Shown: positions 19,036 to 35,001, counted from the first letter of the whole stretch. The stretch: DNA of 63,507 bases, filler included, from Octopus bimaculoides (GCF_001194135.2; 6 parts of 6 records of this genome joined end to end with filler, not necessarily neighbours in it); one strand, 5' to 3'. Made by a program: numbers and translations. The notes: generated by a model from the letters alone, not told the origin.

Positions 19036-19370
19036 AAGTAGCTTGCTTACCAACCACATGGTTCCGGGTTCATTCCCACTGCGGGGCACCTTGGGCAAGT
19101 GTCTTCTACTATAGCCTCAGGCCGACCAATGCCTTGTGAGTGGATTTGGCAGACGGAAACTGGAAGAAGCCTGTCGTATATATGTATATATGTATATGTG
19201 TGTATGTGTTTGTGTGTCTTTGTTTGTCCCCCCCCCCGTAACCTAGCGGTTCGGCAAAAGAGACCGATAGAATAAGTACTAGGCATCCAAAGAATAAGTC
19301 CTGGGGTCGATTTACTCGACTAAAGGCGGTGCTCCAGCATGGCCACAGTCAAATAACTGAAACATATAGA
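19036..19370 (+). mobile_element. SINE family B
   Basis: Same diagnostic blocks as 11340-11865, with an internal deletion. Confidence 0.9.
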
Positions 19371-20002
19371 TACTAAAACTAAAATTGAATAACAGAAGAG
19401 AAGACACTTTGCAGGGCAAAAACATGCACAATTAAAATGACTTGCAATAAACTGGAATCTACTGAGGATGGTGGCGGTAGTGGTGGGAGGGAATAATAAA
19501 CCAATGCTTCGGAAGATGGAAGAGGGATGAGGAGAAGTAAGCCCGTCCAATCTGGAGGGTGTGGTCTAATTCAGAATGAGACAATAAATATAACTTCCGC
19601 TGTCTTCAATGACGTTTTAAAGAGTTTTTGGTTACAGGTGTGTGTGTGTGTGTGTGTGTGTTACATGTACCGCGAAAAAGAGATACGCCCACACAGCACA
19701 CGCGCGCGCGCACACACACACACAAACTTATTTCGCTATACGTAGGAAAATATGGAGATTATGATGGTGAAAAAAAAAATATTGTTCATAAAATTCCTAT
19801 TTTTCAAAATAAAAAGAAAAAAAAAAATTACCCGAACCCCCTCCCGATTCTAGCAGGTTATCCACATGCTAGAAATAACAGACAGATCTCCCACAAACCT
19901 TGTTTCCTTTTAACTTTCACAAAAATTGATAGTTTTTAATAAAATTGTCGATATATACGCTGCTATAAAATAATGAAAGAAATATGTAATCAATCTACTA
20001 TC

Positions 20003-20255
20003 TTGTTGTTGGCACTCCGTCGCTTACGACGTCGAGGGTTCCAGTTGATCCGATCAACGGAACAGCCTGCTCGTGAAATTAACGTGCAAGTGGCTGAGCA
20101 CTCCACAGACACGTGTACCCTTAATGTAGTTCTCGGGGTGAGATTCAGCGTGACACAGTGTGACAAGGCTGACCCTTTGAATTACAGGCACAACAGAAAG
20201 AATAAGTAAGAGTGATAGAAAGTTGTGGTGGAAGAGTACAGGAGGGTTCGCCACC
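20003..20255 (-). mobile_element. SINE family D
   Basis: GGCACTCCGTCGCTTACGACGTCGAGGGTTCCAGTTGATCCGATCAACGGAACAGCCTGCTCGTGAAATTAACG, shared with 26903, 41770-42305 and 45337. Confidence 0.85.
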
Positions 20256-21179: not shown

Positions 21180-21700
21180 CTACCCTCACCTTCCGCCATG
21201 GCTTCAAGATGCCTCCAGAATTTAACGCATGCATTCCTCACTGTTACACCAGGAAGATCTTTGGAAACCTCCTTTGCCATCGGCTTGGCCTTGATGTTAC
21301 AGACAGAGCAGTTGAAGTCTTTTTCAGCTATGTCCTACACATAGTATTCAATGAAATTATAATAAAAAGAATTAGGGATTAGTGAAGTTGTAGAAATTCT
21401 CCGCTTCTGATTCTTTCCAGAGAAATGGCATGGGACCAGATTTTATTGCAACACATAGCCTTCCAGCAGCGACCCTCTCCAGTCGGGGATTGACTACAGT
21501 CTCCTGCAGCCTCAAATAGTAATCTGAGTAGAGCCTAAGGCTCTGTTTGAAGATGTGGAGTGTCATGAAACCACCCCCACTGGAAACATACCCAAAAACC
21601 ATTACAGTTCCCGTTGACCACAGCTTCGTAGTCTCTGTTGCAACTGTCCATGTCATGTCATACAGCCTTTACAGTGTTCATAGAGCAGTAAGTAGCAGTC
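21180..21700 (-). mobile_element. Second maT/DD37D-type transposase remnant
   Basis: TVMVFGYVSSGGGFMTLHIF...VVNPRLERVAAGR...ENFYNFTNP is homologous by eye to the 9817-10416 frame. Confidence 0.7.
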
Positions 21701-21719
21701 ATGATGTTAACCATTTTGA

Positions 21720-23900
21720 TATCCACCACAAATCATCATGATATATGTAACACATTTCTAATATCAAATGGCTTCCAGTCCTGCATGTTAGCGAACTGTT
21801 TCTCTGAAGTATTAAATATATGAAATACACCACCCATTTTTTTTTTAATAGTCTTCTGTCTGATATCGAAACAATTTTATTTCCAGTTGCAATTTTAGAG
21901 TAAAATCTCACTCTCTGATTTGGTTCAATGCATAGTGCACATCTGCTATTGCTCATTGGAATCTCTTCTATCAATGCTTTCAGCAGGATCAGTCTAATAA
22001 TTCTCAGCTCACTTTCCATAGGACTAACAATGCCCATGAAGGACCTGTTGCCATGGTTAAATCTTTATATGCTTCCAGGTTCAAGAAACCATTGCCTCAC
22101 AGGGGCTTGGAAGTTGCCACCTTTTGGCAAATCTACAATACTCTTTACTCTTTTACATGTTTCAGTCATTTGACTGTGGCCATGCTGGAGCACCGCCTTT
22201 TTAGTCGAGCAAATCGACCCCAGGACTTATTCTTTTTGCCGAACCGCTAAGTTACGGGGACGTAAACACACCAGCATCGGTTGTCAAGCACACACACACA
22301 CACACACNNNNNNNNNNNNNNNNNNNNNNNNNNNNNNNNNNNNNNNNNNNNNNNNNNNNNNNATATATATATATATATACATATATACGATTGGCTTCTT
22401 TCAGTTTCCGTCTACCAAATCCACTCACAAGGCTTTGGTCGGCCTGAGGCTATAGTAGAAGACACTTGCCCAAGGTGCCACGCAGTGGGACTGAACCCGG
22501 AACCATGTGGTTGGTAAGCAAGCTACTTACCACACAGCCACTCCTGCGCCTATATGTAATTAATCCTGGTAAATCTGTTCTGCTTCCACTTTTTTATAGT
22601 GTCTGATGTTCTAAGCCTTTTGTAGAAAAAGCTGACCTCTTTATCCATTTATTTCCTGCTAACTCTAACCTTGATGGTTCAGGTGCACCTCTGAGTTTCC
22701 TTCTCATATAGAACAGGTTTTTATTTTGTAGTCATAACTCTGAAGCTTGTAACTACAGTGATCTCTGGGCTTGATCAGTCTAGAGCATCTAGTCCTGACA
22801 ACAATCCTGTGATACTCTTGAAGCAGGGTGCTCCTGGGATGTTTTCTTTACTCTCTAAGTTATTTAATCTTTGTCTTGCTAAGTCTTGTTTTTCATCTTG
22901 CTGGAATATATCTCATGTTGTCTCAATCTACCGATTTATGGATAAATCAGGAGAGGATCATGTTGTAGCTCTTGATATATCCAAAACTTTAGGATTTGGC
23001 ATGCTGGTTTGTTCCATAAGCTCTCTTCCTATGGAAAGGTTATTGCATGCGTGTGGCTCTGGACAGTGTTACTTTTCAGTACTCTATCAATACCGATGTT
23101 CTCCAAGGCTCTGTTATTCATCCAACTCTATTTCACTTCTACATCCAACAACCTTCCTGCCAATGTTCTTCAATTCACCAATGTTTGTGACGATGATTCT
23201 TAACTTTATTCTGGTTTTCCTGATAATCTCTCTCCTTTGAAATGGTTGGAATTTGACGCTAATTTTGAAGTGGATCTGCATGCTGTTGAGAAACGGAGCA
23301 GGTGGTTAGTAACTTTCAACCTTAGCAAGACCAAACTCAGGTCTTTCACTAACAAGTGGGGACCTATCTTCTCCCCATTTGCATGAATTACAGGTTGGCA
23401 GTATCACATGGTGAAATAGTCAGAACGCTGGATGAAAGGTTTTCGTTGGAACCACTTGGTTTCACTTTCTTGCCTCGTCTTTTTGAGGGTTCTTACATAC
23501 AGACAATTGGTAGATCTGCTTCCTGTAATGTGGGGTCATTGTATAACTCAAAGGACTATCTCACATCCAAGGCTATTTTGTATCTTTAAAAGTCCACACT
23601 TCATCTTTGTATGGAATATTGTAATCATATTTGGACTGGTGCACTTGACCAGGTACAGAAGCAAGTTTTTAATTTGATTGGTTCTTCTCTTGCTTCTTTA
23701 TTCCAGATAACTTTGTTCCATCTCGCCAGACTCAAAACTCACACCTTCATCTAAATGCTGTTGTGCTTCCGTGAATAAGGAAGTTTTTCTATATTCATAG
23801 GTTTTTTTCCCTTGAACTGCCAAACCTTGGAACACTCTTCCATTACATTGTTTTCCCCCTTCTTATGACCTGAACATTTTTATGTCTAAAGTAAGCTCAT
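21720..23900 (+). mobile_element. Highly degenerate Jockey/CR1-group LINE (endonuclease-RT region), interrupted by a SINE
   Basis: ASSPDNNPVILLKQGAPGMFSLLSKLFNLCLAKSCF and HVVALDISK fit the ASGPDGIP..LK...LFNKCL and ALDISKAFD motifs, with many frameshifts. Confidence 0.65.
22140..22552 (-). mobile_element. SINE family B nested in the LINE fossil
   Basis: Tail TACTCTTTTAC at 22140 and head GCCACTCCTGCGCCTAT at about 22535-22552. Confidence 0.9.
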
Positions 23901-24719: not shown

Positions 24720-25049
24720 ATTCTTTTACTCTTTTATTTGTTTCAGTCATTTGACTGCGGCCATGCTGGAGCACCGCCTTTTTAGTCGAGCAAATCGACC
24801 CCAGGACTTATTCTTTGGAAGCCTAGTACTTATTCTATCGGTCTCTTTTGCCGAACCGCTAAGTTACGGGGGACGTAACCCCCCCCCCATTGGTTGTCAA
24901 GCGATGTTGTGGGGACAAACACAGGCACACAAACATATACATACACATACATACATATATATATATACATATATACGACGGGCTTCTTTCAGTTTCCGTC
25001 TACCAAATCCACTCACAAGGCTTTGGTCGGCTTGAGGCTATAGTAGAAG
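24720..25049 (-). mobile_element. SINE family B (head lost in N gap)
   Basis: Family B tail and body blocks. Confidence 0.9.
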
Positions 25050-26290: not shown

Positions 26291-26679
26291 TTATTGAGGA
26301 TCATTTATACGTAAACTGGTGATAGACAAATAGCTTGAGGGTTCATTGCGGCTGATGAATTTTGCCTTGTTCATCTTCAAAAGCATGGTATCATTTGCTT
26401 TAAATTGGTGTGTAAACGATGATTGTATTATAGCATGTTCTGATACCTTTTCTAAGGATTTTGAACTCTTTTTTAAATATTTATATTTTGTTCCATTCTT
26501 TTTCTGAAATAACAGGGTTATAAGTGCTATAGAAGTATTTTTTGGAACGTGCAATTGCACTGCACAGTTTATTTGGTAAACCCCATCCTGTGGAACATAT
26601 ATGTAAGTTTCATTGACCAGTTGAATGTTGCCTACATTCTGCTTCTTATCCTTCTTCCAATGTAAACTAGTTACGTCAT
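26291..26679 (-). CDS. TNF-like gene, terminal exon encoding most of the TNF homology domain
   Basis: Acceptor TTATTTCTTTTTCAG| at 26680, phase 1. Translation DVTSLHWKKDKKQNVGNIQLVNETYIYVPQDGVYQINCAVQLH...SSFTHQFKANDTMLLKMNKAKFISRNEPSSYLSITSLRINDPQ*. It aligns by eye to THD landmarks LxW, NGxxL..LxVPxxGxY, FxLxxGDxLxxxxN and the terminal YFG strand. The ORF track shows only the last 89 aa. Confidence 0.8.
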
Positions 26680-26877
26680 CTGAAAAAGAAATAACAAATA
26701 TGATTTCCCATTTTGCACAAAGCTAGCAATTATGAGGGGAAGATTAAGACAATTTCATTGACCCTAGGGTTTAACTTGTACTTATTTTATCGACTCTAAA
26801 AGGATGAAAGCCTCAACGGAATTTCAGACAAAGTCTTAATGATTCTGCTAACTCAAAACTTTAATGATAATAATAAT

Positions 26878-26902
<25 letters not shown>

Positions 26903-26913
<11 letters not shown>

Positions 26914-27440
26914 GCACTTCGTCGCTTACGACGTCGAGGGTTCCAGTTGATCCGATCAACGGAACAGCCTGCTCGTGAAATTAACGTGCCAGTCGTCGAG
27001 TTTAATTCGATTTCGATTTCGACTTCACTTGCCTCAACAGGTCTTCGCAAGTGGAGTTTANNNNNNNNNNNNNNNNNNNNNNNNNNNNNNNNNNNNNNNN
27101 NNNNNNNNNNNNNNNNNNNNNNNNNNNNNNNNNNNNNNNNNNNNNNNNNNNNNNNNNNNNNNNNNNNNNNNNNNNNNNNNNNNNNNNNNNNNNNNNNNNN
27201 NNNNNNNNNNNNNNNNNNNNNNNNNNNNNNNNNNNGCTATCCTCATCCATTCTCACCACATGCCCATACTAGCGCAATCGTCTCTCTTGCACACCACAAC
27301 TGATGCTTCGTAAGTTCAACTTTTCTCTCAAGGTACTTACACTCTGTCTAGTATGCACACTGACATTACACATCCATCGGAGCATACTGGCTTCATTCCT
27401 TGCGAGCCTACGCATGTCCTCAGCAGTCACAGCCCATGTT
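26903..27440 (-). mobile_element. RTE LINE C-terminal fragment fused to a SINE D 3' end
   Basis: 27236-27440 encodes ETWAVTAEDMRRLARNEASMLRWMCNVSVHTRQSVSTLREKLNLRSISCGVQERRLR (RTE C-terminus). 26990-27060 is RTE 3'UTR and 26903-26990 is the family D tail. Confidence 0.85.
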
Positions 27441-27468
27441 TCATATATATATATACACATATATATAT

Positions 27469-27507
<39 letters not shown>

Positions 27508-27558
27508 ATTTAAAATATATATATTTACATACACACACACACACATATATACATCTCA

Positions 27559-27622
<64 letters not shown>

Positions 27623-27721
27623 ACACGCGTGTGTATAAAGTAGTTATTATTAGTTACGTAGTTTCTCATAATTCAAATTATGAGAAAAAGGTGTGCAATA
27701 AATCTGAATAAATTAGCTTAC

Positions 27722-27769
27722 CCAACTCATCATAATCATTTGTTTTTAGGTGTAACAAGGAATGGTGAA
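27722..27769 (-). CDS. TNF-like gene, 48-nt exon encoding strand A of the TNF homology domain
   Basis: Strong acceptor CTTTCTCTCTTCCAATCTTTCAG| and donor G|GTAAGC. Phase 1 to 1 reading xHHSLLHLKTNDYDEL(D); LLHL matches the AHL/AHV strand-A motif and joins in frame to the 26679 exon. Confidence 0.75.
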
Positions 27770-28163
27770 CTGAAAGATTGGAAGAGAGAAAGCAGAATGT
27801 GAGAAGGATATATTTTGATATAGGTTCAATATCAACAGAAGACTATTCAAAGAAAAGAGCACGTACTGATGTATTTCATATATTTAACATTTCAGATTAT
27901 CACCTAATAAATAACTATACAATATATTAACCATTTCACAATCATCATTATTATTACGAGGAAAATAATCTAGAACAATTATTAACCATTAATGAAAACA
28001 GACCCAGGATTATATTAAACATCCTTGTATTACACCCTTCACATAGTAGTTCCATGAGCTTTAACATGTTCAGTTGTACAGTAGCANNNNNNNNNNNNNN
28101 NNNNNNNNNNNNNNNNNNNNNNNNNNNNNNNNNNNNNNNNNNNNNNNNNNNNNNNNNNNNNNN

Positions 28164-28625
28164 CTTTGTAAGCCTAGTACTTATTCTATCGGTCTCTGTT
28201 GCCGAACCGCTAAGTTACGGGGACATAAACACACCAGCATCGATTGTCAAGCGATGTTGGGGGACAAACACAGACACACAAGCACACACACACATATATA
28301 CATATATACGACGGGCTTCTTTCAGTTTCCGTCTACCAAATCCATTCACAAGGCTTTGGTCGGCCCGAGGCTATAGTAGAATACACTTGCCCAAGATGCC
28401 ACGCAGTGGGACTGAACCCGGAACCATGTCCCTTCACTGGGTCCCATGCTGGTGGCACATAAAAAGCACCTACTACACTCTTGGAATGGTTGGCATTAGG
28501 AAGGGCAACCAGCTGTAGAAACCTTACCAGATCAGATTGGAGCCTGCTGCAGCCTACTGGCTTGCCAGTCCTCAGTCAAACCAGCCAACCCATGCCAGTA
28601 TAAATGAAACAAGTAAAAGAGAAAA
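28164..28625. mobile_element. Mosaic of SINE B (minus), family A fragment (plus) and a B-type tail (plus)
   Basis: The B body ends at about 28427 (GAACCCGGAACCATGT). The family A core follows at about 28445-28595, then TGAAACAAGTAAAAGAG at about 28605. Confidence 0.75.
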
Positions 28626-29524
28626 GAAAAAAAAAATTTGGAGCATTATTCTAGTTAAAATAGCAGCAACTTCAGAACAAAACTTCTGAAATTAGTTTGC
28701 TTGCATTCNNNNNNNNNNNNNNNNNNNNNNNNNNNNNNNNNNNNNNNNNNNNNNNNNNNNNNNNNNNNNNNNNNNNNNNNNNNNNNNNNNNNNNNNNNNN
28801 NNNNNNNNNNNNNNNNNNNNNNNNNNNNNNNNNNNNNNNNNNNNNNNNNNNNNNNNNNNNNNNNNNNNNNNNNNNNNNNNNNNNNNNNNNNNNNNNNNNN
28901 NNNNNNNNNNNNNNNNNNNNNNNNNNNNNNNNNNNNNNNNNNNNNNNNNNNNNNNNNNNNNNNNNNNNNNNNNNNNNNNNNNNNNNNNNNNNNNNNNNNN
29001 NNNNNNNNNNNNNNNNNNNNNNNNNNNNNNNNNNNNNNNNNNNNNNNNNNNNNNNNNNNNNNNNNNNNNNNNNNNNNNNNNNNNNNNNNNNNNNNNNNNN
29101 NNNNNNNNNNNNNNNNNNNNNNNNNNNNNNNNNNNNNNNNNNNNNNNNNNNNNNNNNNNNNNNNNNNNNNNNNNNNNNNNNNNNNNNNNNNNNNNNNNNN
29201 NNNNNNNNNNNNNNNNNNNNNNNNNNNNNNNNNNNNNNNNNNNNNNNNNNNNNNNNNNNNNNNNNNNNNNNNNNNNNNNNNNNNNNNNNNNNNNNNNNNN
29301 NNNNNNNNNNNNNNNNNNNNNNNNNNNNNNNNNNNNNNNNNNNNNNNNNNNNNNNNNNNNNNNNNNNNNNNNNNNNNNNNNNNNNNNNNNNNNNNNNNNN
29401 NNNNNNNNNNNNNNNNNNNNNNNNNNNNNNNNNNNNNNNNNNNNNNNNNNNNNNNNNNNNNNNNNNNNNNNNNNNNNNNNNNNNNNNNNNNNNNNNNNNN
29501 NNNGGACGGGGCGGAAGTCTTGCC

Positions 29525-29865
29525 AAATTTTTTCCCACGAGAGTTCCGGACCCCAGTAATGAACTCGTTTGCATACATGACTGCCTCTACGTAGTTATTT
29601 GTGTTGTTGTTTACTTTGTAAAACAGTAAAGGGAGAGGGTTGCTAGCACACCACCCTCTACCCACATTTTTCCCATCCACATCTTTACCATATGTGTCCC
29701 TTAGCAAAATCCGATAACAGGTATAGACGCAAATCTATCTAATTACTTTTCTCCTAAAAATCAGGCGATCGGTCGACTTACAACACCAGTCAAGGTGAGC
29801 TCTGATTGGCTGTATGCAAATGAGTTCATTAGTCGGGTCCGAAACTCACGAGGGAAAAGAAATTT
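29525..29865. repeat. Imperfect inverted repeat, arms of about 53 bp separated by about 230 bp
   Basis: The reverse complement of 29525-29577 (TGTATGCAAACGAGTTCATTACTGGGGTCCGGAACTCTCGTGGGAAAAAATTT) aligns to 29811-29865 (TGTATGCAAATGAGTTCATTAGTCGGGTCCGAAACTCACGAGGGAAAAGAAATTT). Confidence 0.85.
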
Positions 29866-30339
29866 CGCGTCCGGGTTATAAGTCAATGTAACTAGGCCAC
29901 TCGCCTTCACTCCACGTTAGTCTGAGACTGTTTCGATATGTGTCGTGTGACATGCTTGTCTAGATGTTCAGACAACGTTGATTTAATTACAGCGCATACA
30001 TTTGATCAACATAAGACAAATCATTTGTGCGGGACCACGCCCACATACTTGTTAACACCCACAAGGCTGGTTTATTACTTTTTTTTTTGGTCCCGGGGGA
30101 AGATCTTTATATTGCCCCAACTCGAAACGCTTAGTTTTAGAATGGTGGCAGCTGATGAAGGAAATGTTCTCTATGTGGCCTGTATGTTTTCTGTACTCCG
30201 TTTATCATTTTGTCCACGTTTTTTTTTTGCTACGTCCTGTACCCAGATATGCATCTATATATACATGTAGATGTAGGTATGTACATACATGTACGCATAT
30301 ACTCATATATTATTTGTATTACCTACCTACCTACCTACA

Positions 30340-30370
<31 letters not shown>

Positions 30371-30623
30371 GTCAAATGTCAAATGTAAGCATAACAGGTT
30401 GGATGTAGTTATTTGGGACATAGGGGTATAGACAAAAAATATCTCTTTGACACGTCAAACAGAACAAGCGCACACACACACGTCCACGGGAGGTGTTTAC
30501 AATTGATAAGACAATACGTGCTCACGGAAACTACCGAAGGGGCAAAGATATATCTCTTTGGAAAATCAAAGAAAAAGAGGATATCTAAGGACAACTGCTT
30601 CGAAACCTCCAGCTTCTATATCC

Positions 30624-31045
30624 ATAGGCGCAGGAGTGGCTGTGTGGTAAGTTGCTAGCTTACCAACCACATGGTCCCGGGTTCAGTCCCACTGCGTAGC
30701 CCCTTGGGCAAGTGTCTTCTACTATAGCCTCGGGCCGACCAAAGCCTTGTGAGTGGATATGGTAGACGGAAACTGAAAGAAGCCCGTCGTATATGTGTAT
30801 ATATATATGTATATGTATGTGTGTGTATATGTTTGTATGTGTGTGTGTTTGTCCCCCCAACATCGCTTGACAACCGATGCTAGTGTGTTTATGTCCCCGT
30901 AACTTAGCTGTTCGGCAAAAAGGGAACCGATAGAATAAGTACTAGGCTTACAAAGAATAAGTCCTGGGGTCAATTTGCTCGACTAAAGGCGGTGCTCCAG
31001 CATGGCCACAGTCAAATGACTGAAACAAGTAAAAGAGTAAAAGAG
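30624..31045 (+). mobile_element. Full-length SINE family B
   Basis: Head ATAGGCGCAGGAGTGGCTGTGTGG through tail CAAGTAAAAGAGTAAAAGAG with no gap. Confidence 0.92.
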
Positions 31046-31066
31046 ACTATGAATTCATATTCATAC

Positions 31067-31175
31067 CAATAATAATTGAAGTACTAGGTTTTGTTAGTAA
31101 ATGCTTAGAATCTGGATAAAGTGGGATTTTCAGAAATAGAAACCGACCGGTTGATTTGTACATAACAAATGCAAT
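31067..31175 (-). CDS. Candidate stalk exon of the TNF-like gene (unconfirmed)
   Basis: Acceptor TTTTACCGTTCCACTCACAG| and donor ATTG|GTATGA flank 109 nt that are open in phase 0 to 1, the phase needed to join the flanking exons (IAFVMYKSTGRFLFLKIPLYPDSKHLLTKPSTSIII). An alternative short candidate near 30513-30540 and several N gaps could also hold the true exon. Confidence 0.3.
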
Positions 31176-31546
31176 CTGTGAGTGGAACGGTAAAACTATG
31201 CAAGAATTTCCTCAGGTTCCAAATGCGAATTTGTCTGTGTTAGCTACATACCAACGATGGGGCTTTGTATCTTTGTCGGAAACCTATTCCTTCCTCAGTG
31301 GAAGATTTATAATAATTTAAAAATAGAAGAAGAAACGGCGGCGGTAAAGACAATGGAACACACATACACACACACACAGAGGTAAATCGAAAACGAAAAT
31401 AATTCAAAAGGATGTACGCAGACAATGCATTCATGTTGACATACATAAGTATAGTAGTAAAACCGCGATGTTGTGTGTGTGGCGACTGGCTGTTTACTGT
31501 TTAGTCTATGTTATCTCTTATTGAGATTTTATAACTAGCTATTTTG

Positions 31547-31578
<32 letters not shown>

Positions 31579-32014
31579 NNNNNNNNNNNNNNNNNNNNNN
31601 NNNNNNNNNNNNNNNNNNNNNNNNNNNNNNNNNNNNNNNNNNNNNNNNNNNNNNNNNNNNNNNNNNNNNNNNNNNNNNNNNNNNNNNNNNNNNNNNNNNN
31701 NNNNNNNNNNNNNNNNNNNNNNNNNNNNNNNNNNNNNNNNNNNNNNNNNNNNNNNNNNNNNNNNNNNNNNNNNNNNNNNNNNNNNNNNNNNNNNNNNNNN
31801 NNNNNNNNNNNNNNNNNNNNNNNNNNNNNNNNNNNNNNNNNNNNNNNNNNNNNNNNNNNNNNNNNNNNNNNNNNNNNNNNNNNNNNNNNNNNNNNNNNNN
31901 NNNNNNNNNNNNNNNNNNNNNNNNNNNNNNNNNNNNNNNNNNNNNNNNNNNNNNNNNNNNNNNNNNNNNNNNNNNNNNNNNNNACATACATATATACATA
32001 TATATAATATAAAT

Positions 32015-32070
<56 letters not shown>

Positions 32071-32330
32071 TGCATATATACATACGTATATGTACATATA
32101 TCTTTAGGTATATATATGTATGCGTATGTGGGCACAGGACGTCATGAAACGTGTACAACAACAAAAAAAGTACGTAGCTCGAGTACATGGAACATGACCT
32201 ATTCTTTCGAACAACGAAAGACACAAATATATATAGGGTAGCGAATGTTTTTAGAAACGTCACTACCAGTTGCCTAGCATGTATAAAAAGTCAACAGACA
32301 ACATATTCTCAATATATAATAGTGTACATT

Positions 32331-32463
32331 TAAACACAAGAGACAACTACCTTTAACGGGTAATTTTACATGCTAGAAGAAGCAGTCAAAACGTTTTGGT
32401 CGTTTTGACTGCTTCTTCTGGCGTGTAAAACTACCTGTTAAAGGTAGTTTTCTCTTGTGTTTA
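32331..32463. repeat. Near-perfect foldback palindrome (63-bp arms, 7-nt loop)
   Basis: Left arm TAAACACAAGAGACAACTACC...GCAGTCAAAACG and right arm CGTTTTGACTGC...GGTAGTTTTCTCTTGTGTTTA, five mismatches, loop TTTTGGT. Confidence 0.92.
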
Positions 32464-32629
32464 TATGTATGTATGTATGTATGTATGTATATATATATAT
32501 AGACATACACACACATATATATATACACACACACAAACACGTGCTATTTTTGTACCATATGTGTTATTTATGTATATTGTGAAATAGACATGAGCTAAAT
32601 AAAAAAAGAGAATAGATTAAATTAATTAC

Positions 32630-33259
32630 CTCGATTCGAACAAGATTAGCAATCGCCAATATACCCAACATGACAATCAAAAAAACCAAAATCATGCATT
32701 GATGATCTTTACGGCAGGCTGCAATGCATGGACGTCCTTTTTTCACGGTTCTATTTGTTTGGTTCTCATCAGCCCCAGGTATCTCATTTTGATCGGCTGT
32801 TTCCGGAGCCGAAGGTGGGGTCGTTCCAGGCATTACTACTCGGTCACCATGAACACCATTTCTTAAACTGTTTTCTTCCTGCTTGGGATATCTCTCGCGA
32901 CTTTCTTCACCGGTTTTGGGTGTAATAGCAGATTCCTTGTCAGCGTCGGGTGTTCTTCGACTACTCTCGGGTGTCGCTTGTTGATCGGTAGCTTCACCAG
33001 ACATCAACGGTACATTTTCTTCTATATTCACGTCTTCTTCACTTCTTCGTACAGATTCGTACCCGTTGTTTGACGGGGCAACCCCCGAGTTTTCCTGTGT
33101 ACTGTCTTCAGTACACATAGATGGTATGCTTTCTATAGCATTCTTCTCCTCTTCTCCCTCAGTGTTATTCATAATTTCGTTCTTGTTCTTTGGTTGGGCT
33201 CCGGTAGACGAAACGTCTCGTTCCTCCATTTCTAAGTTATCGTTTTGTCCGCCCGACAT
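32630..33259 (-). CDS. TNF-superfamily ligand, first coding exon (about 187-aa acidic cytosolic tail plus single TM helix, type II topology)
   Basis: ATG at 33259 opens 210 codons ending CMILVFLIVMLGILAIANLVRIE, then a phase-0 donor GAG|GTAATT at 32629. Basic and Cys-containing residues (KKGRPCIAACRK) precede the hydrophobic helix and there is no signal peptide. The link to the THD exons is inferred from strand, order and domain architecture. Confidence 0.75.
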
Positions 33260-33355
33260 TTCCTAAAGTTTTCACCAACTGATGTTAATATGAGCACTCC
33301 TATCGACTTATACTCTCATCTCTCCCCTTTCCTCTGTTCTACTTCCTTGTTACTA

Positions 33356-33406
<51 letters not shown>

Positions 33407-34716
33407 CCTCTCTCATTACACACAAAGACACACGCATACACAGTTTATAAACTTAAGCTTATAAGCGATCACCATGTATTGGACTAAGATAAATAGTCTA
33501 AAAGTTGGGAACTTTTATATGCCTCAATATTAGATTGCTTACTTTAGCTTATAAAGTGATAGCTTATAAGCTTTAAGCTTATAAAATATTATTAATATTA
33601 TTATTATTTACAGAATTTTAAAATCGATATCACACACGCACAAAAAGGTCACGTGTCTTCCGCCTTTCGAATCTACCGAATCGTCTATACAGTTAAACGC
33701 TTTATAGGGTTCATTATCTGACCAGCCAACATCCTAATGTGTGTGTGTGTCCATATAGAATCTATCTATCTATCTATCTATCTAACAATGACAATATTGA
33801 CCAAGGTTATCGTGGTCTTTTCCGTAGGCTTTTCTTTCCACGGCTAAACCTAAACTGTCCTCCCCTTTTACACGAGAACATTATTGTGATACACGATCCC
33901 TATTGATCGCTATTTTTTTTTCTCGATCCCTTTTGATTGAACTCCCCCCCTTTTCCTTCCTACGATCCCTTTTGATCGACACCCCCCTACTTCCTTTTTT
34001 TTTCTCTTCCCCCTCCCAAAAAGAAAAGCTCTACATTGTATTTGTCCCATCTTTGTTGAGCCCTGTGTGGCTAATAAAAGAAATGTATCTATCTATCTAT
34101 CTATCTATCTATACACACACACACACACACATATAACCTAGATCTCAAACCCCTTTGTAGTCAATACTTTTTATTCCTCCATAAACTTCCGATCACATAC
34201 ATATTTTTACCCATCCATCTATCTATACATACATACATGCATCCATCCATCCATCCATACATACATACATATCGACTCAATTACGAACACGCTTAGCATT
34301 CCTATCATGGCCATCTCCTCGGATGATTGTCTCGCTCTGGTTTGGATTTACATATCAACTTATCCAAACTCATAACCTCATTTCTTTCATTCCATAACAG
34401 TGATGGAAAAGGAGCTGGGAAATGGGGGGGGGGGCAGGAGTGNNNNNNNNNNGCTGGGAAATGGGGGGGGGGGCAGGAGTGATGATAGCGAGGCTCCCTT
34501 TACTTTCAGTTTGGAAAGACTGGATTCAAAAGTGCGAAAAGACGATATTTTATTAAGATAGAATTATCTCTTTTACAATAATCTTTTCAGTCTCTGATGT
34601 CATCTCACGATTTCTTTAACTCAAAATGAACATTATTCCAATTTATATTTTGGGTACTGTTGCCATTTTCCCGCTTTGTCTGTTTACCTCGCTGCACTCA
34701 ACCATGGTTCTACAAG

Positions 34717-35001
34717 ACGCAAGAGTGGCTGTGTGGTAAGTTGCTTGCTTACCAACCACATGCTTCCGGGTTCAGTCCCACTGCGTGACATCTTGGGCAA
34801 GTGTCTTCTACTATAGCCTCGGGCCGACCAAAGCCTTGTGAGTGGATTTGGTAGACGGAAACTGAAAGAAACTCGTCGTATATATGTATATATGTGTGTC
34901 TGTCTTTGTCCCCCCCCCCCAACATTGCTTCACAACCGATGGTGGTGTGTTTACGTCCCCGTAACTTAGCGGTTCGGCAAAAGAGAACGATAGAATAAGT
35001 A
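34717..35001 (+). mobile_element. SINE family B (tail lost in N gap)
   Basis: Family B head and body blocks. Confidence 0.9.

What the first reader, a model, noticed from the sequence alone, without database searches (positions are those of the whole stretch)
26291..33259. Hidden spliced TNF-superfamily ligand gene that the ORF track splits into unrecognisable pieces
Seen: three minus-strand exons with canonical splice sites; the last two join in frame through a phase-1 intron to give a complete THD-like domain (LLHL...LHW...GNIQLVN..IYVPQDGVY...HQFKANDTMLLKMN...SYLSI), and the first encodes a cytosolic tail plus one TM helix. Known: TNF ligands are type II membrane proteins with most of the THD in the last exon. 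Inference: this is a divergent cephalopod TNF ligand of about 390 aa that could easily be mis-annotated or left as an uncharacterised protein.
Basis: partly seen in the sequence, partly recalled or inferred. Interest (0 to 1): 0.75.

Follow-up and report, generated by a model that had tools for sequence, protein, structure and literature searches.

The report
Octopus TNF-family ligand gene, one exon missing
This is a real but ordinary member of an octopus-specific cluster of TNF-like signalling-protein genes.

Summary
The three minus-strand exons exist with canonical splice sites. The 48-nt exon (27769-27722) and the last exon (26679-26291) join through a phase-1 intron into a 144-aa domain. 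That domain is 64-67% identical to annotated octopus THD proteins. It scores 22.8 bits on Pfam TNF (E 9.5e-5, curated cutoff 23). Its predicted structure is confident (pLDDT 87) and its 50 best PDB matches are all TNF-superfamily ligands.

Exon 1 (33259-32630) encodes a 187-aa acidic tail and one transmembrane helix. Its donor is phase 0, whereas the 48-nt exon needs phase 1, so the three-exon model is out of frame.

The four related genes whose exons I mapped (three O. bimaculoides paralogs and the syntenic O. vulgaris gene CAI9740218.1, 359 aa) each have a small stalk exon (phase 0 to 1) between these two. No such exon exists in the sequenced part of the window. Homology with the related introns runs to the gap edge at 28086 and stops there. 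The exon therefore most likely lies in gap 28087-28163 or gap 28709-29503.

The expected product is about 365-373 aa, not about 390. No deposited protein matches this gene. The family is known only as uncharacterised or auto-annotated THD proteins. Compared with the O. vulgaris counterpart the gene evolves fast (dN/dS about 1.3), yet its reading frames are intact. Verdict: new member of a known kind.

The parts
32630..33259 (-). Exon 1 coding part: start codon, 187-aa acidic low-complexity cytosolic tail and transmembrane helix. It ends at a phase-0 donor, GAG|gtaatt.
   Evidence: ORF and sequence. Its first 11 residues are identical to those of O. vulgaris P0006/P0031, and identity over the whole exon is 49-56%. 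The DNA is collinear with L003 9868-10792.
32639..32698 (-). Transmembrane helix CMILVFLIVMLGILAIANLV (aa 188-207). The basic residues lie on the N-terminal side, which implies type II orientation.
   Evidence: Kyte-Doolittle maximum of 2.94 over 19 residues. Translation checked. Paralogues carry a TM helix at the same place, just before the exon 1 donor.
28087..29503 (-). Interval holding the two assembly gaps (28087-28163 and 28709-29503) where the missing stalk exon is expected. That exon should be about 31-55 nt, phase 0 to 1, and end in a base that completes the codon xTT. The sequenced stretch between the gaps (28164-28708) is repeat DNA.
   Evidence: A stalk exon is present in L001a, L001b and L003, and a tblastn hit marks one in L002. 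No candidate was found in sequenced DNA. Intron homology with L001a, L001b, L002 and the syntenic O. vulgaris gene in L003 stops at 28085-28086. L003 19113-20707, which contains the stalk exon, has no match anywhere in the piece.
27770..28086 (-). Conserved 3' half of the intron upstream of the 48-nt exon, including the polypyrimidine tract and acceptor. It runs into the gap edge.
   Evidence: Mean column identity of 82% across six gene copies. A 110-nt core occurs in the window and all four loci, each time in this intron.
27722..27769 (-). 48-nt 'HH' exon (phase 1 in, phase 1 out). It encodes (x)HHSLLHLKTNDYDEL and the first base of the next codon, and forms the first THD strand.
   Evidence: Sequence. 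In the two copies mapped base by base (L001a, L003) the exon has the same length and the same phases. Acceptor ATCTTTCAG is invariant in all six aligned copies and the donor is GT in all six.
26680..27721 (-). Phase-1 intron between the 48-nt exon and the last exon. It contains microsatellites, repeat fragments and gap 27061-27235.
   Evidence: No residues are missing at the junction in the alignments.
26291..26679 (-). Last exon: 129 codons of the TNF homology domain plus stop TAA (26293-26291).
   Evidence: tblastn identity of 51-68% to paralogues. Collinear with L003 23381-24283 at 84% DNA identity, flanks included.

Best explanation
The region holds a protein-coding gene for a type II membrane ligand of the TNF superfamily. 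It belongs to a tandemly expanded gene cluster that was detected only in octopods.

The gene has four coding exons on the minus strand:
1. Exon 1 (33259-32630): a long acidic cytosolic tail plus the membrane anchor.
2. A short proline-rich stalk exon, not present in the assembled sequence and most likely inside gap 28087-28163 or gap 28709-29503.
3. A 48-nt exon (27769-27722).
4. The last exon (26679-26291).

Exons 3 and 4 together encode a complete ten-strand jelly-roll TNF homology domain.

By analogy with characterised TNF ligands (inferred, not shown), the protein would trimerise through the THD on the cell surface, or after shedding, and engage cysteine-rich TNFR-type receptors. The long cytosolic tail might allow reverse signalling. 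Its likely roles are in immunity or cell death.

The gene is the syntenic counterpart of O. vulgaris CAI9740218.1 (359 aa). It is diverging unusually fast at the protein level while keeping intact reading frames. It lacks a deposited protein model, plausibly because the gap removes the exon needed to keep the frame.
For: Shown:
- Splice sites and frames.
- THD peptide against octopus THD proteins: E 6.4e-57, 64-67% identity.
- Pfam PF00229: E 9.5e-5, 22.8 bits, covering profile positions 1-124 of 127. Seven of 17 family members hit PF00229.
- Profile search of PDB sequences: one significant hit (E 3.6e-5), chain 7dov_A, a zebrafish TNF-family ligand. The only other matches (VAMP2, E 0.24-0.49) fall on the N-terminal and TM part of the profile.
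- AlphaFold2 with a 17-sequence alignment: pLDDT 87.1, pTM 0.81, all-beta.
- Foldseek against PDB: top 50 hits are all TNF-alpha, TL1A, RANKL, LT-alpha or CD40L, probability 1.00, TM-scores 0.69-0.82.
- TM helix with basic residues on its N-terminal side.
- Four-exon structure with the phase pattern 0 / 0-1 / 1-1 / 1, read base by base in L001a and L003. In L001b the stalk exon and the 48-nt exon were located. In L002 only tblastn hits mark them.
- The window model aligns end to end with P0031, from MSGGQNDNLEM to the terminal NDPQ.
- DNA synteny of exon 1, intron 1 blocks, the 48-nt exon, the last exon and the 3' flank with L003 at 72-93% identity. This is similar to the 84-93% seen between orthologous O. 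bimaculoides and O. vulgaris DNA.
- Missing exon: no candidate in sequenced DNA. Homology stops at the gap edge. The unique O. vulgaris intron segment that carries the stalk exon has no match in the piece.
- Coding constraint: dN/dS of 0.39-0.64 against four paralogues. All five family-invariant residues are kept. In simulations of unconstrained substitution, the frames stay free of stops in only 2.5% (THD) and 0.6% (exon 1) of runs.
Against: - The stalk exon has not been seen, so a continuous reading frame is inferred rather than shown.
- There is no transcript evidence. No protein from any source, including transcriptome-derived Logan contigs, matches this gene.
- The Pfam score is 0.2 bits below the curated cutoff.
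- Against the syntenic O. vulgaris gene the THD has dN/dS of 1.26 and exon 1 has 0.83, neither distinguishable from 1 (Fisher p 0.54). The neighbouring ortholog pair has 0.16. Substitutions are not concentrated in loops. Relaxed constraint therefore cannot be excluded.
- Trimerisation, receptor binding and biological role were not tested.
- The source species was not identified.
Confidence: 0.82

Rival explanations
1. The locus is a recently inactivated or decaying copy (a pseudogene) of the octopod TNF-ligand cluster. The exons look intact, but the gene is no longer under protein-level constraint or is not expressed.
For: - dN/dS of 1.26 (THD) and 0.83 (exon 1) against the syntenic O. vulgaris gene, compared with 0.16 for the neighbouring ortholog pair.
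- Substitutions are equally frequent in strands and loops.
- No matching protein or transcript-derived sequence exists in the databases.
- One exon is unaccounted for.
Against: - No stop or frameshift occurs in 1,067 coding bases. In-frame survival was simulated at 2.5% and 0.6% for the two parts, before counting indels.
- All gaps in the exon 1 protein alignment are whole codons, with no frameshift.
- All splice sites are canonical and conserved.
- The family-invariant residues W23, G48, Y50, I52 and I135 are kept.
- dN/dS against the paralogues is below 1.
- The O. vulgaris counterpart is also intact.
Confidence: 0.12
2. The gene really has three coding exons. Exon 1 splices to an upstream acceptor at 27842 (…ctttgaatag|TCT), which extends the 48-nt exon by 25 codons (SSVDIEPISKYILLTFCFLSSNLSV). 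This extension is in frame with the phase-0 donor of exon 1, so no exon is missing.
For: The frame upstream of 27769 is open for 25 codons, and an AG with a pyrimidine-rich tract precedes 27842.
Against: - The AG is simply the end of the in-frame TAG stop, so a phase-0 'acceptor' at that spot is automatic and carries no information.
- The same stretch is intron in the annotated paralogues and in the syntenic O. vulgaris gene, which use the ATCTTTCAG acceptor and a separate stalk exon.
- The inserted peptide is hydrophobic and unlike any of the family's proline-rich stalks.
Confidence: 0.04
3. Exon 1 and the THD exons belong to two different genes. The long-tail exon would be the 5' end of another gene whose remainder is lost in the gaps, and the THD exons would have their own short first exon, as in the 225-aa paralogues.
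For: The join is not demonstrated because of the frame mismatch and three gaps. Most paralogues have short first exons of 68-92 aa.
Against: - The O. vulgaris counterpart joins the homologous long N-terminus, stalk, 48-nt exon and THD in one 359-aa model, and the window is collinear with it throughout.
- Other family members also have long tails: 309, 350 and 384 aa in total.
- Among the minus-strand ORFs listed between 27770 and 32630, none looks like a first exon.
- The spacing of 4.9 kb from exon 1 to the 48-nt exon falls between those of paralogues L001b and L001a.
Confidence: 0.02

Closest known systems
Octopus vulgaris CAI9740218.1 (P0031, 359 aa; named by similarity to LOC115223917), chromosome OX597837.1 at 30.36-30.42 Mb
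   Same: - Syntenic counterpart with the same architecture: long acidic tail, TM helix, stalk, 48-nt exon and THD.
- Same first 11 residues and the same C-terminal NDPQ.
- Collinear DNA in the exons, introns and 3' flank.
   Different: - Only 53% identical overall and 63% in the THD.
- The window's stalk exon is not in the assembled sequence.
- The window's cytosolic tail is about 14 residues longer.
Octopus bimaculoides LOC106873363 (P0001, 225 aa; UniProt 'THD domain-containing protein') and its neighbours on CM046624.1
   Same: - Closest annotated THD, at 65% identity.
- Identical exon phases and an identical 48-nt exon.
- Conserved intron upstream of that exon.
   Different: P0001 has a short tail: its exon 1 encodes 68 aa against 210 aa here. 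It is a different paralogue, as shown by 67% THD identity, DNA identity limited to the exons and one intron, and dS of 0.38.
Vertebrate TNF superfamily ligands (TNF-alpha, TL1A, RANKL, lymphotoxin-alpha, CD40L)
   Same: - Predicted fold, with TM-scores of 0.69-0.82.
- Type II topology.
- THD at the C-terminus, encoded mostly by the last exon (established knowledge of the family).
- The W…G.Y.I motifs of strands A to C align with zebrafish TNF-family chain 7dov.
   Different: - Sequence identity of 11-19%.
- The C-terminal strand reads SYLSITSL, without the glycine of the usual FGAF-type motif (my knowledge of the family).
- The cytosolic tail is much longer and more acidic than that of mammalian TNF (my knowledge of the family).
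- Receptor and function are unknown.
Drosophila Eiger (invertebrate TNF ligand)
   Same: Also an invertebrate type II TNF ligand with a long N-terminal region before the THD. This rests on my knowledge of the literature. The preprint 10.1101/2024.07.27.603686 treats the octopus genes as Eiger homologues.
   Different: - I did not compare the two directly.
- A family profile search of 1.84 billion representative proteins found 20 proteins at E <= 0.001. Every one that a source assigns to a species is from an octopod, except the weakest hit (a sea-spider protein). The family is therefore very divergent from Eiger and from other molluscan TNFs.

Membership tests
TNF superfamily ligands (TNFSF; THD proteins) | C-terminal TNF homology domain with the ten-strand jelly-roll fold | tested here: met
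   AlphaFold2 model at pLDDT 87.1 and pTM 0.81 with about 10 beta strands. The 50 best Foldseek hits in PDB are all TNFSF ligands, at probability 1.00 and TM-scores of 0.69-0.82.
TNF superfamily ligands (TNFSF; THD proteins) | Sequence match to the curated family model (Pfam PF00229) above its gathering score | tested here: inconclusive
   22.8 bits against a cutoff of 23. E is 9.5e-5 and the match covers profile positions 1-124 of 127. Seven of 17 family members match at E <= 0.01, the best at 3.2e-6. UniProt labels several paralogues 'TNF family profile domain-containing'.
TNF superfamily ligands (TNFSF; THD proteins) | Type II membrane topology: N-terminal cytosolic tail, single TM anchor, extracellular stalk and THD | tested here: inconclusive
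   The TM helix (aa 188-207) with basic residues on its N-terminal side is present, and there is no signal peptide-like N-terminus. The link between the anchor and the THD crosses an exon that is not in the assembly. It is supported only by the O. vulgaris counterpart.
TNF superfamily ligands (TNFSF; THD proteins) | Assembly into a (homo)trimer through the THD | not testable with these tools
   Only monomer prediction was available. The conserved aromatic and hydrophobic positions W23, Y50, I52 and I135 are kept, but that does not test trimerisation.
TNF superfamily ligands (TNFSF; THD proteins) | Binding to a TNFR-type cysteine-rich-domain receptor | not tested
   I made no search for receptors and no interaction prediction.
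Octopod TNF-ligand gene cluster (O. bimaculoides CM046624.1, O. vulgaris OX597837.1) | Four coding exons with phases 0 / 0-1 / 1-1 / 1: a tail-plus-TM exon, a short stalk exon, a 48-nt exon and a THD exon | tested here: inconclusive
   Three of the four exons are present with the right lengths and phases. The stalk exon was not found in sequenced DNA, and its expected position falls in the assembly gaps.
Octopod TNF-ligand gene cluster (O. bimaculoides CM046624.1, O. vulgaris OX597837.1) | Significant sequence similarity of the THD to cluster members, plus a conserved intron upstream of the 48-nt exon | tested here: met
   THD identity of 25-67% to the 16 family members in alignment A2. The intron block is 75-86% identical, with a 110-nt core 88-95% identical to its consensus.
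C1q-domain proteins (same jelly-roll superfold) | Match to Pfam C1q (PF00386), usually with a collagen-like region | tested here: not met
   With the E-value cutoff relaxed to 10, Pfam reported only TNF for the THD peptide. There are no Gly-X-Y repeats in any exon. All 50 top structural matches are TNFSF ligands, not C1q.

The most novel reading that the evidence does not exclude
This long-tailed member of the octopod TNF-ligand cluster may be under positive, diversifying selection rather than decay. That would make it a rapidly adapting immune or cell-death ligand specific to octopods. The unusually conserved intron next to its two micro-exons may be a functional element, such as a splicing or regulatory element, shared by every gene of the cluster.
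Probability: 0.2. Interest if true: 0.5.

Novelty: new member of a known kind. Interest (0 to 1): 0.3.

Why it matters
TNF ligands are central immune and cell-death signals, and cephalopod immunity is poorly characterised. This locus adds one more gene, with no deposited protein model, to an octopod-specific tandem expansion of TNF ligands.

It also shows concretely how an assembly gap that swallows a micro-exon of about 31-55 nt can prevent any gene model from being made. Neighbouring paralogues have ended up with fused or truncated public models. This bears on gene counts and on any evolutionary analysis of the family.

The fast protein divergence from the O. vulgaris counterpart and the conserved intron are leads rather than results. 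The finding does not change what is known about TNF biology.

Tried and rejected
- **Direct three-exon join.** Rejected because the phases do not match: a phase-0 donor against a phase-1 acceptor.
- **Exhaustive scan for the stalk exon.** I scanned 27770-32652 (minus strand) for AG…GT exons of length 3n+1 without stops and scored them against known stalk peptides. The best candidate (30120-30063, LGQYKDLPPGPKKKVINQP) has no polypyrimidine tract. It lies 2.3 kb from the 48-nt exon, against 0.5-1.4 kb in relatives, and does not resemble any stalk.
- **Sensitive blastn of paralogue and O. vulgaris introns and stalk exons against the window**. This gave only microsatellite and SINE noise beyond the gap edge.
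- **Extended-exon model starting at 27842.** Rejected as an automatic by-product of a TAG stop.
- **Structure prediction with only five sequences.** It gave a poor model (pLDDT 59.5) and was replaced by the 17-sequence run.
- **Looking up the 231-aa read-through ORF to find the source contig.** It is not on record, so the species remains unidentified. Divergence from O. vulgaris is similar to that of O. bimaculoides, but this is not proof.
- **Pfam on neighbouring ORFs** (27269-27559, 22758-23240, 21372-21656, 21699-22037). No hits.
- **Rfam on the whole piece.** No hits.
- **Literature.** No paper specifically on cephalopod TNF ligands turned up beyond one preprint.

Full report
**1. The observation**

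On the minus strand the last exon runs 26679-26291. Its acceptor is ttctttttcag|AT and its stop is TAA at 26293-26291. A 48-nt exon runs 27769-27722, with acceptor atctttcag|TTCACC and donor TTGG|gtaagc.

The ORF at 33259 starts two codons after an in-frame TAG. It is coding up to the donor GAG|gtaatt at 32630, giving 630 nt or 210 aa. It encodes a 187-aa tail rich in acidic and polar residues (38 D+E and 21 K+R in the first 185). One hydrophobic helix follows, CMILVFLIVMLGILAIANLV (aa 188-207, Kyte-Doolittle 2.94), preceded by KKGRPCIAACRKDH. That arrangement implies an N-terminus-inside, type II orientation.

**2. The gaps**

None of the three exons touches an N run. Gap 27061-27235 lies in the intron between the 48-nt exon and the last exon. 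Alignments with homologues show no missing residue at that junction, so nothing coding is hidden there. The other three gaps (28087-28163, 28709-29503, 31579-31983) lie between exon 1 and the 48-nt exon, and here they matter.

**3. The three exons do not form one frame**

Exon 1 ends in phase 0. The 48-nt exon begins with two bases (TT) that complete a codon started in the previous exon, so it needs a phase-1 donor.

I mapped related genes to see how they handle this:

| Gene | Exon structure |
|---|---|
| O. bimaculoides LOC106873363 (P0001, locus L001) | Exon 1 ends LIQ\|gtaaga (phase 0); 43-nt stalk exon VNILQQPEPSPRPQ+T (phase 0 to 1); 48-nt exon (C)TCACCAT…TTGG\|gtaagt; last exon |
| Second gene in L001 | Stalk exon KEKQQQPPQQ, then the 48-nt exon |
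| P0004 (locus L002) | tblastn hits at the stalk and 48-nt exon positions |
| Syntenic O. vulgaris gene (locus L003) | Same four-exon pattern, with a 55-nt stalk exon VYHHLQSETLLQIPPHPQ+T |

The window's gene should therefore have a fourth small exon.

**4. Where that exon is**

An exhaustive scan of the sequenced DNA between the two exons for AG…GT exons of length 3n+1 without stops found nothing that resembles a stalk.

The intron upstream of the 48-nt exon is well conserved in all copies. In the window this conservation runs from 27770 to 28085-28086, the last sequenced bases before the gap, and is about 95-98% identical in the final 40-50 bases.

In O. vulgaris the collinear anchors are:
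- L003 14200 to window 30080.
- L003 20708 to window 28085.

The unique 1.6-kb segment L003 19113-20707, which carries the stalk exon (L003 19570-19623), has no match anywhere in the piece. What lies between the two window gaps (28164-28708) is SINE-like multi-copy repeat.

The stalk exon therefore most likely sits in gap 28087-28163 (if its 77-N size is an underestimate) or in gap 28709-29503. This is an inference. It is the simplest one, and sequencing would test it directly.

An alternative in-frame extension of the 48-nt exon to 27842 exists. However, its 'acceptor' AG is just the end of the in-frame TAG stop, and the homologous stretch is intron in the annotated relatives.

**5. What the protein is**

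- Pfam finds only TNF (PF00229) for the joined peptide: E 9.5e-5, 22.8 bits against a cutoff of 23, covering profile positions 1-124 of 127.
- Against PDB sequences the peptide alone finds only chain 7dov_A (E 0.0087). PDB labels the chain 'Lymphotoxin-alpha' and titles the entry zebrafish tumor necrosis factor alpha. A family profile raises this to E 3.6e-5. The only other profile matches (VAMP2, E 0.24-0.49) fall on the N-terminal and TM part of the profile.
- The word-indexed database search gives four octopus proteins at 50-67% identity, with E down to 6e-57. Sources call them 'uncharacterized protein', 'THD domain-containing' or 'TNF family profile domain-containing'.
- A full HMMER scan of 1.84 billion representative proteins with the family profile finds only 20 proteins at E <= 0.001. 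Every one that a source assigns to a species is from O. bimaculoides, O. sinensis, O. vulgaris or Argonauta hians, except the weakest hit, a sea-spider protein.
- With a 17-sequence alignment AlphaFold2 gives pLDDT 87.1 and pTM 0.81, an all-beta model. With five sequences it gave only 59.5.
- The 50 best Foldseek matches in PDB are all TNF-superfamily ligands (TNF-alpha, TL1A, RANKL, LT-alpha, CD40L), at probability 1.00 and TM-scores of 0.69-0.82. No C1q signal appeared.

**6. Do exon 1 and the THD belong together?**

- The exon 1 peptide has one homologue cluster, from O. vulgaris. Its full-length member CAI9740218.1 (P0031, 359 aa) reads MSGGQNDNLEM…, then TM, stalk, QHAVLYLK…, then THD ending …NDPQ.
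- The window model, with the stalk left as X, aligns with it end to end at 53% identity.
- At the DNA level the window is collinear with that locus: exon 1 (72% over 985 nt), two intron 1 blocks (75% and 80%), the 48-nt exon with its intron (83%), the last exon with its flanks (84% over 905 nt), and the 3' intergenic blocks (86-93%).
- Orthologous O. bimaculoides and O. vulgaris DNA at a neighbouring gene is 84-93% identical. The window is therefore as far from O. vulgaris as O. bimaculoides is, but the species was not identified.
- Other family members also have long tails, with total lengths of 309, 350 and 384 aa.

**7. Is it a working gene?**

Against four O. bimaculoides paralogues the last exon has dN/dS of 0.39-0.64. 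Against the syntenic O. vulgaris gene the picture differs:

| Comparison | dN | dS | dN/dS |
|---|---|---|---|
| Window THD vs O. vulgaris P0031 | 0.24 | 0.19 | 1.26 |
| Window exon 1 vs O. vulgaris P0031 | 0.290 | 0.347 | 0.83 |
| Neighbouring pair P0001/P0002, last exon | 0.062 | 0.386 | 0.16 |

The difference between the window pair and the neighbouring pair is significant (Fisher p 2.7e-5). The window's own ratio is not distinguishable from 1 (p 0.54). Substitutions are not enriched in loops.

On the other side, all family-invariant residues are kept, all splice sites are intact, and both species keep open frames. Under simulated unconstrained substitution at the observed divergence, the THD stays free of stops in 2.5% of runs and exon 1 in 0.6%, before counting indels.

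I read this as a coding gene evolving fast. Decay cannot be excluded without transcripts.

**8. Comparison with what is known, and novelty**

The protein works like, and by fold and architecture belongs with, TNF-superfamily ligands. Trimerisation and receptor binding are untested. It is a further member of an octopod-specific tandem cluster whose members are already in databases with automatic THD labels. A preprint reports six O. vulgaris TNFSF paralogues that form a lineage-specific clade (10.1101/2024.07.27.603686).

What is new here is limited:
- This gene has no deposited protein.
- The likely reason is an assembly gap over a micro-exon.
The expected product is about 365-373 aa: 210 from exon 1, 10-18 from the stalk, and 145 from the 48-nt and last exons.

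Several public models of relatives are visibly wrong:
- XP_052832125.1 fuses two adjacent genes.
- CAI9740217.1 runs into the next paralogue.
- CAI9740207.1 and CAI9740221.1 are truncated.

**9. Verdict**

The gene model needs correcting, and the novelty is low: a new member of a known kind.

Noticed in passing
window 27770-28086 (core 27975-28086); L001 15611-15720 and 23924-24033; L002 14301-14410; L003 20708-20818 and 45198-45308; L004 28562-28666: The intron between the stalk exon and the 48-nt exon is conserved in every copy of the gene family, with a mean column identity of 82% over six copies. A 110-nt core is 88-95% identical to its consensus and is found only in this intron. The whole intron is 77.5% identical between paralogues whose coding dS is about 0.8. 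It has no Rfam match and I have no explanation for it.
   Followed up: partly
window 26291-26679, 27722-27769 and 32630-33259, compared with L003 23599-23985, 21027-21083 and 10001-10597: Protein divergence from the syntenic O. vulgaris gene is unusually fast: dN/dS is 1.26 in the THD and 0.83 in exon 1. The neighbouring ortholog pair P0001/P0002 has 0.16. Both reading frames are nevertheless intact.
   Followed up: partly
L001 22315-27667 (XP_052832125.1, P0007); L003 10001-45834 (CAI9740217.1, P0006); P0012; P0022: Public gene models of neighbouring family members are faulty. P0007 joins half a THD of one gene to the stalk and THD of the next. P0006 leaves the THD after 18 residues and continues into the next paralogue's stalk and 48-nt exons. 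P0012 and P0022 are truncated.
   Followed up: partly
window 19036-19364, 24722-25049, 28164-28429, 30623-31045, 34714-35001: A SINE-like repeat of about 300-420 nt is present at least five times in the piece. It also occurs many times in the O. bimaculoides and O. vulgaris loci, at 77-92% identity. One copy directly follows gap 28087-28163.
   Followed up: no
window 30080-30121: A 42-nt block in intron 1 is 90% identical to, and collinear with, O. vulgaris intron 1 (L003 14159-14200). It overlaps the best, though unconvincing, candidate from the stalk-exon scan.
   Followed up: no
window 27269-27450 (minus); 26839-27050 and 19973-20209 (plus): Intron 3 carries an open fragment (ETWAVTAEDMRRLARNEASMLRWMCNV…) with no Pfam match. 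It also carries a segment encoding ALRRLRRRGFQLIRSTEQPAREINV that recurs at 19973-20209. These are probably remnants of mobile elements.
   Followed up: partly
window 27560-27640, 31984-32110, 33330-33400: Long dinucleotide microsatellites flank the exons and border the assembly gaps: (CA)n in intron 3, (TA)n next to gap 31579-31983, and (GA)n about 70 nt upstream of the start codon.
   Followed up: no
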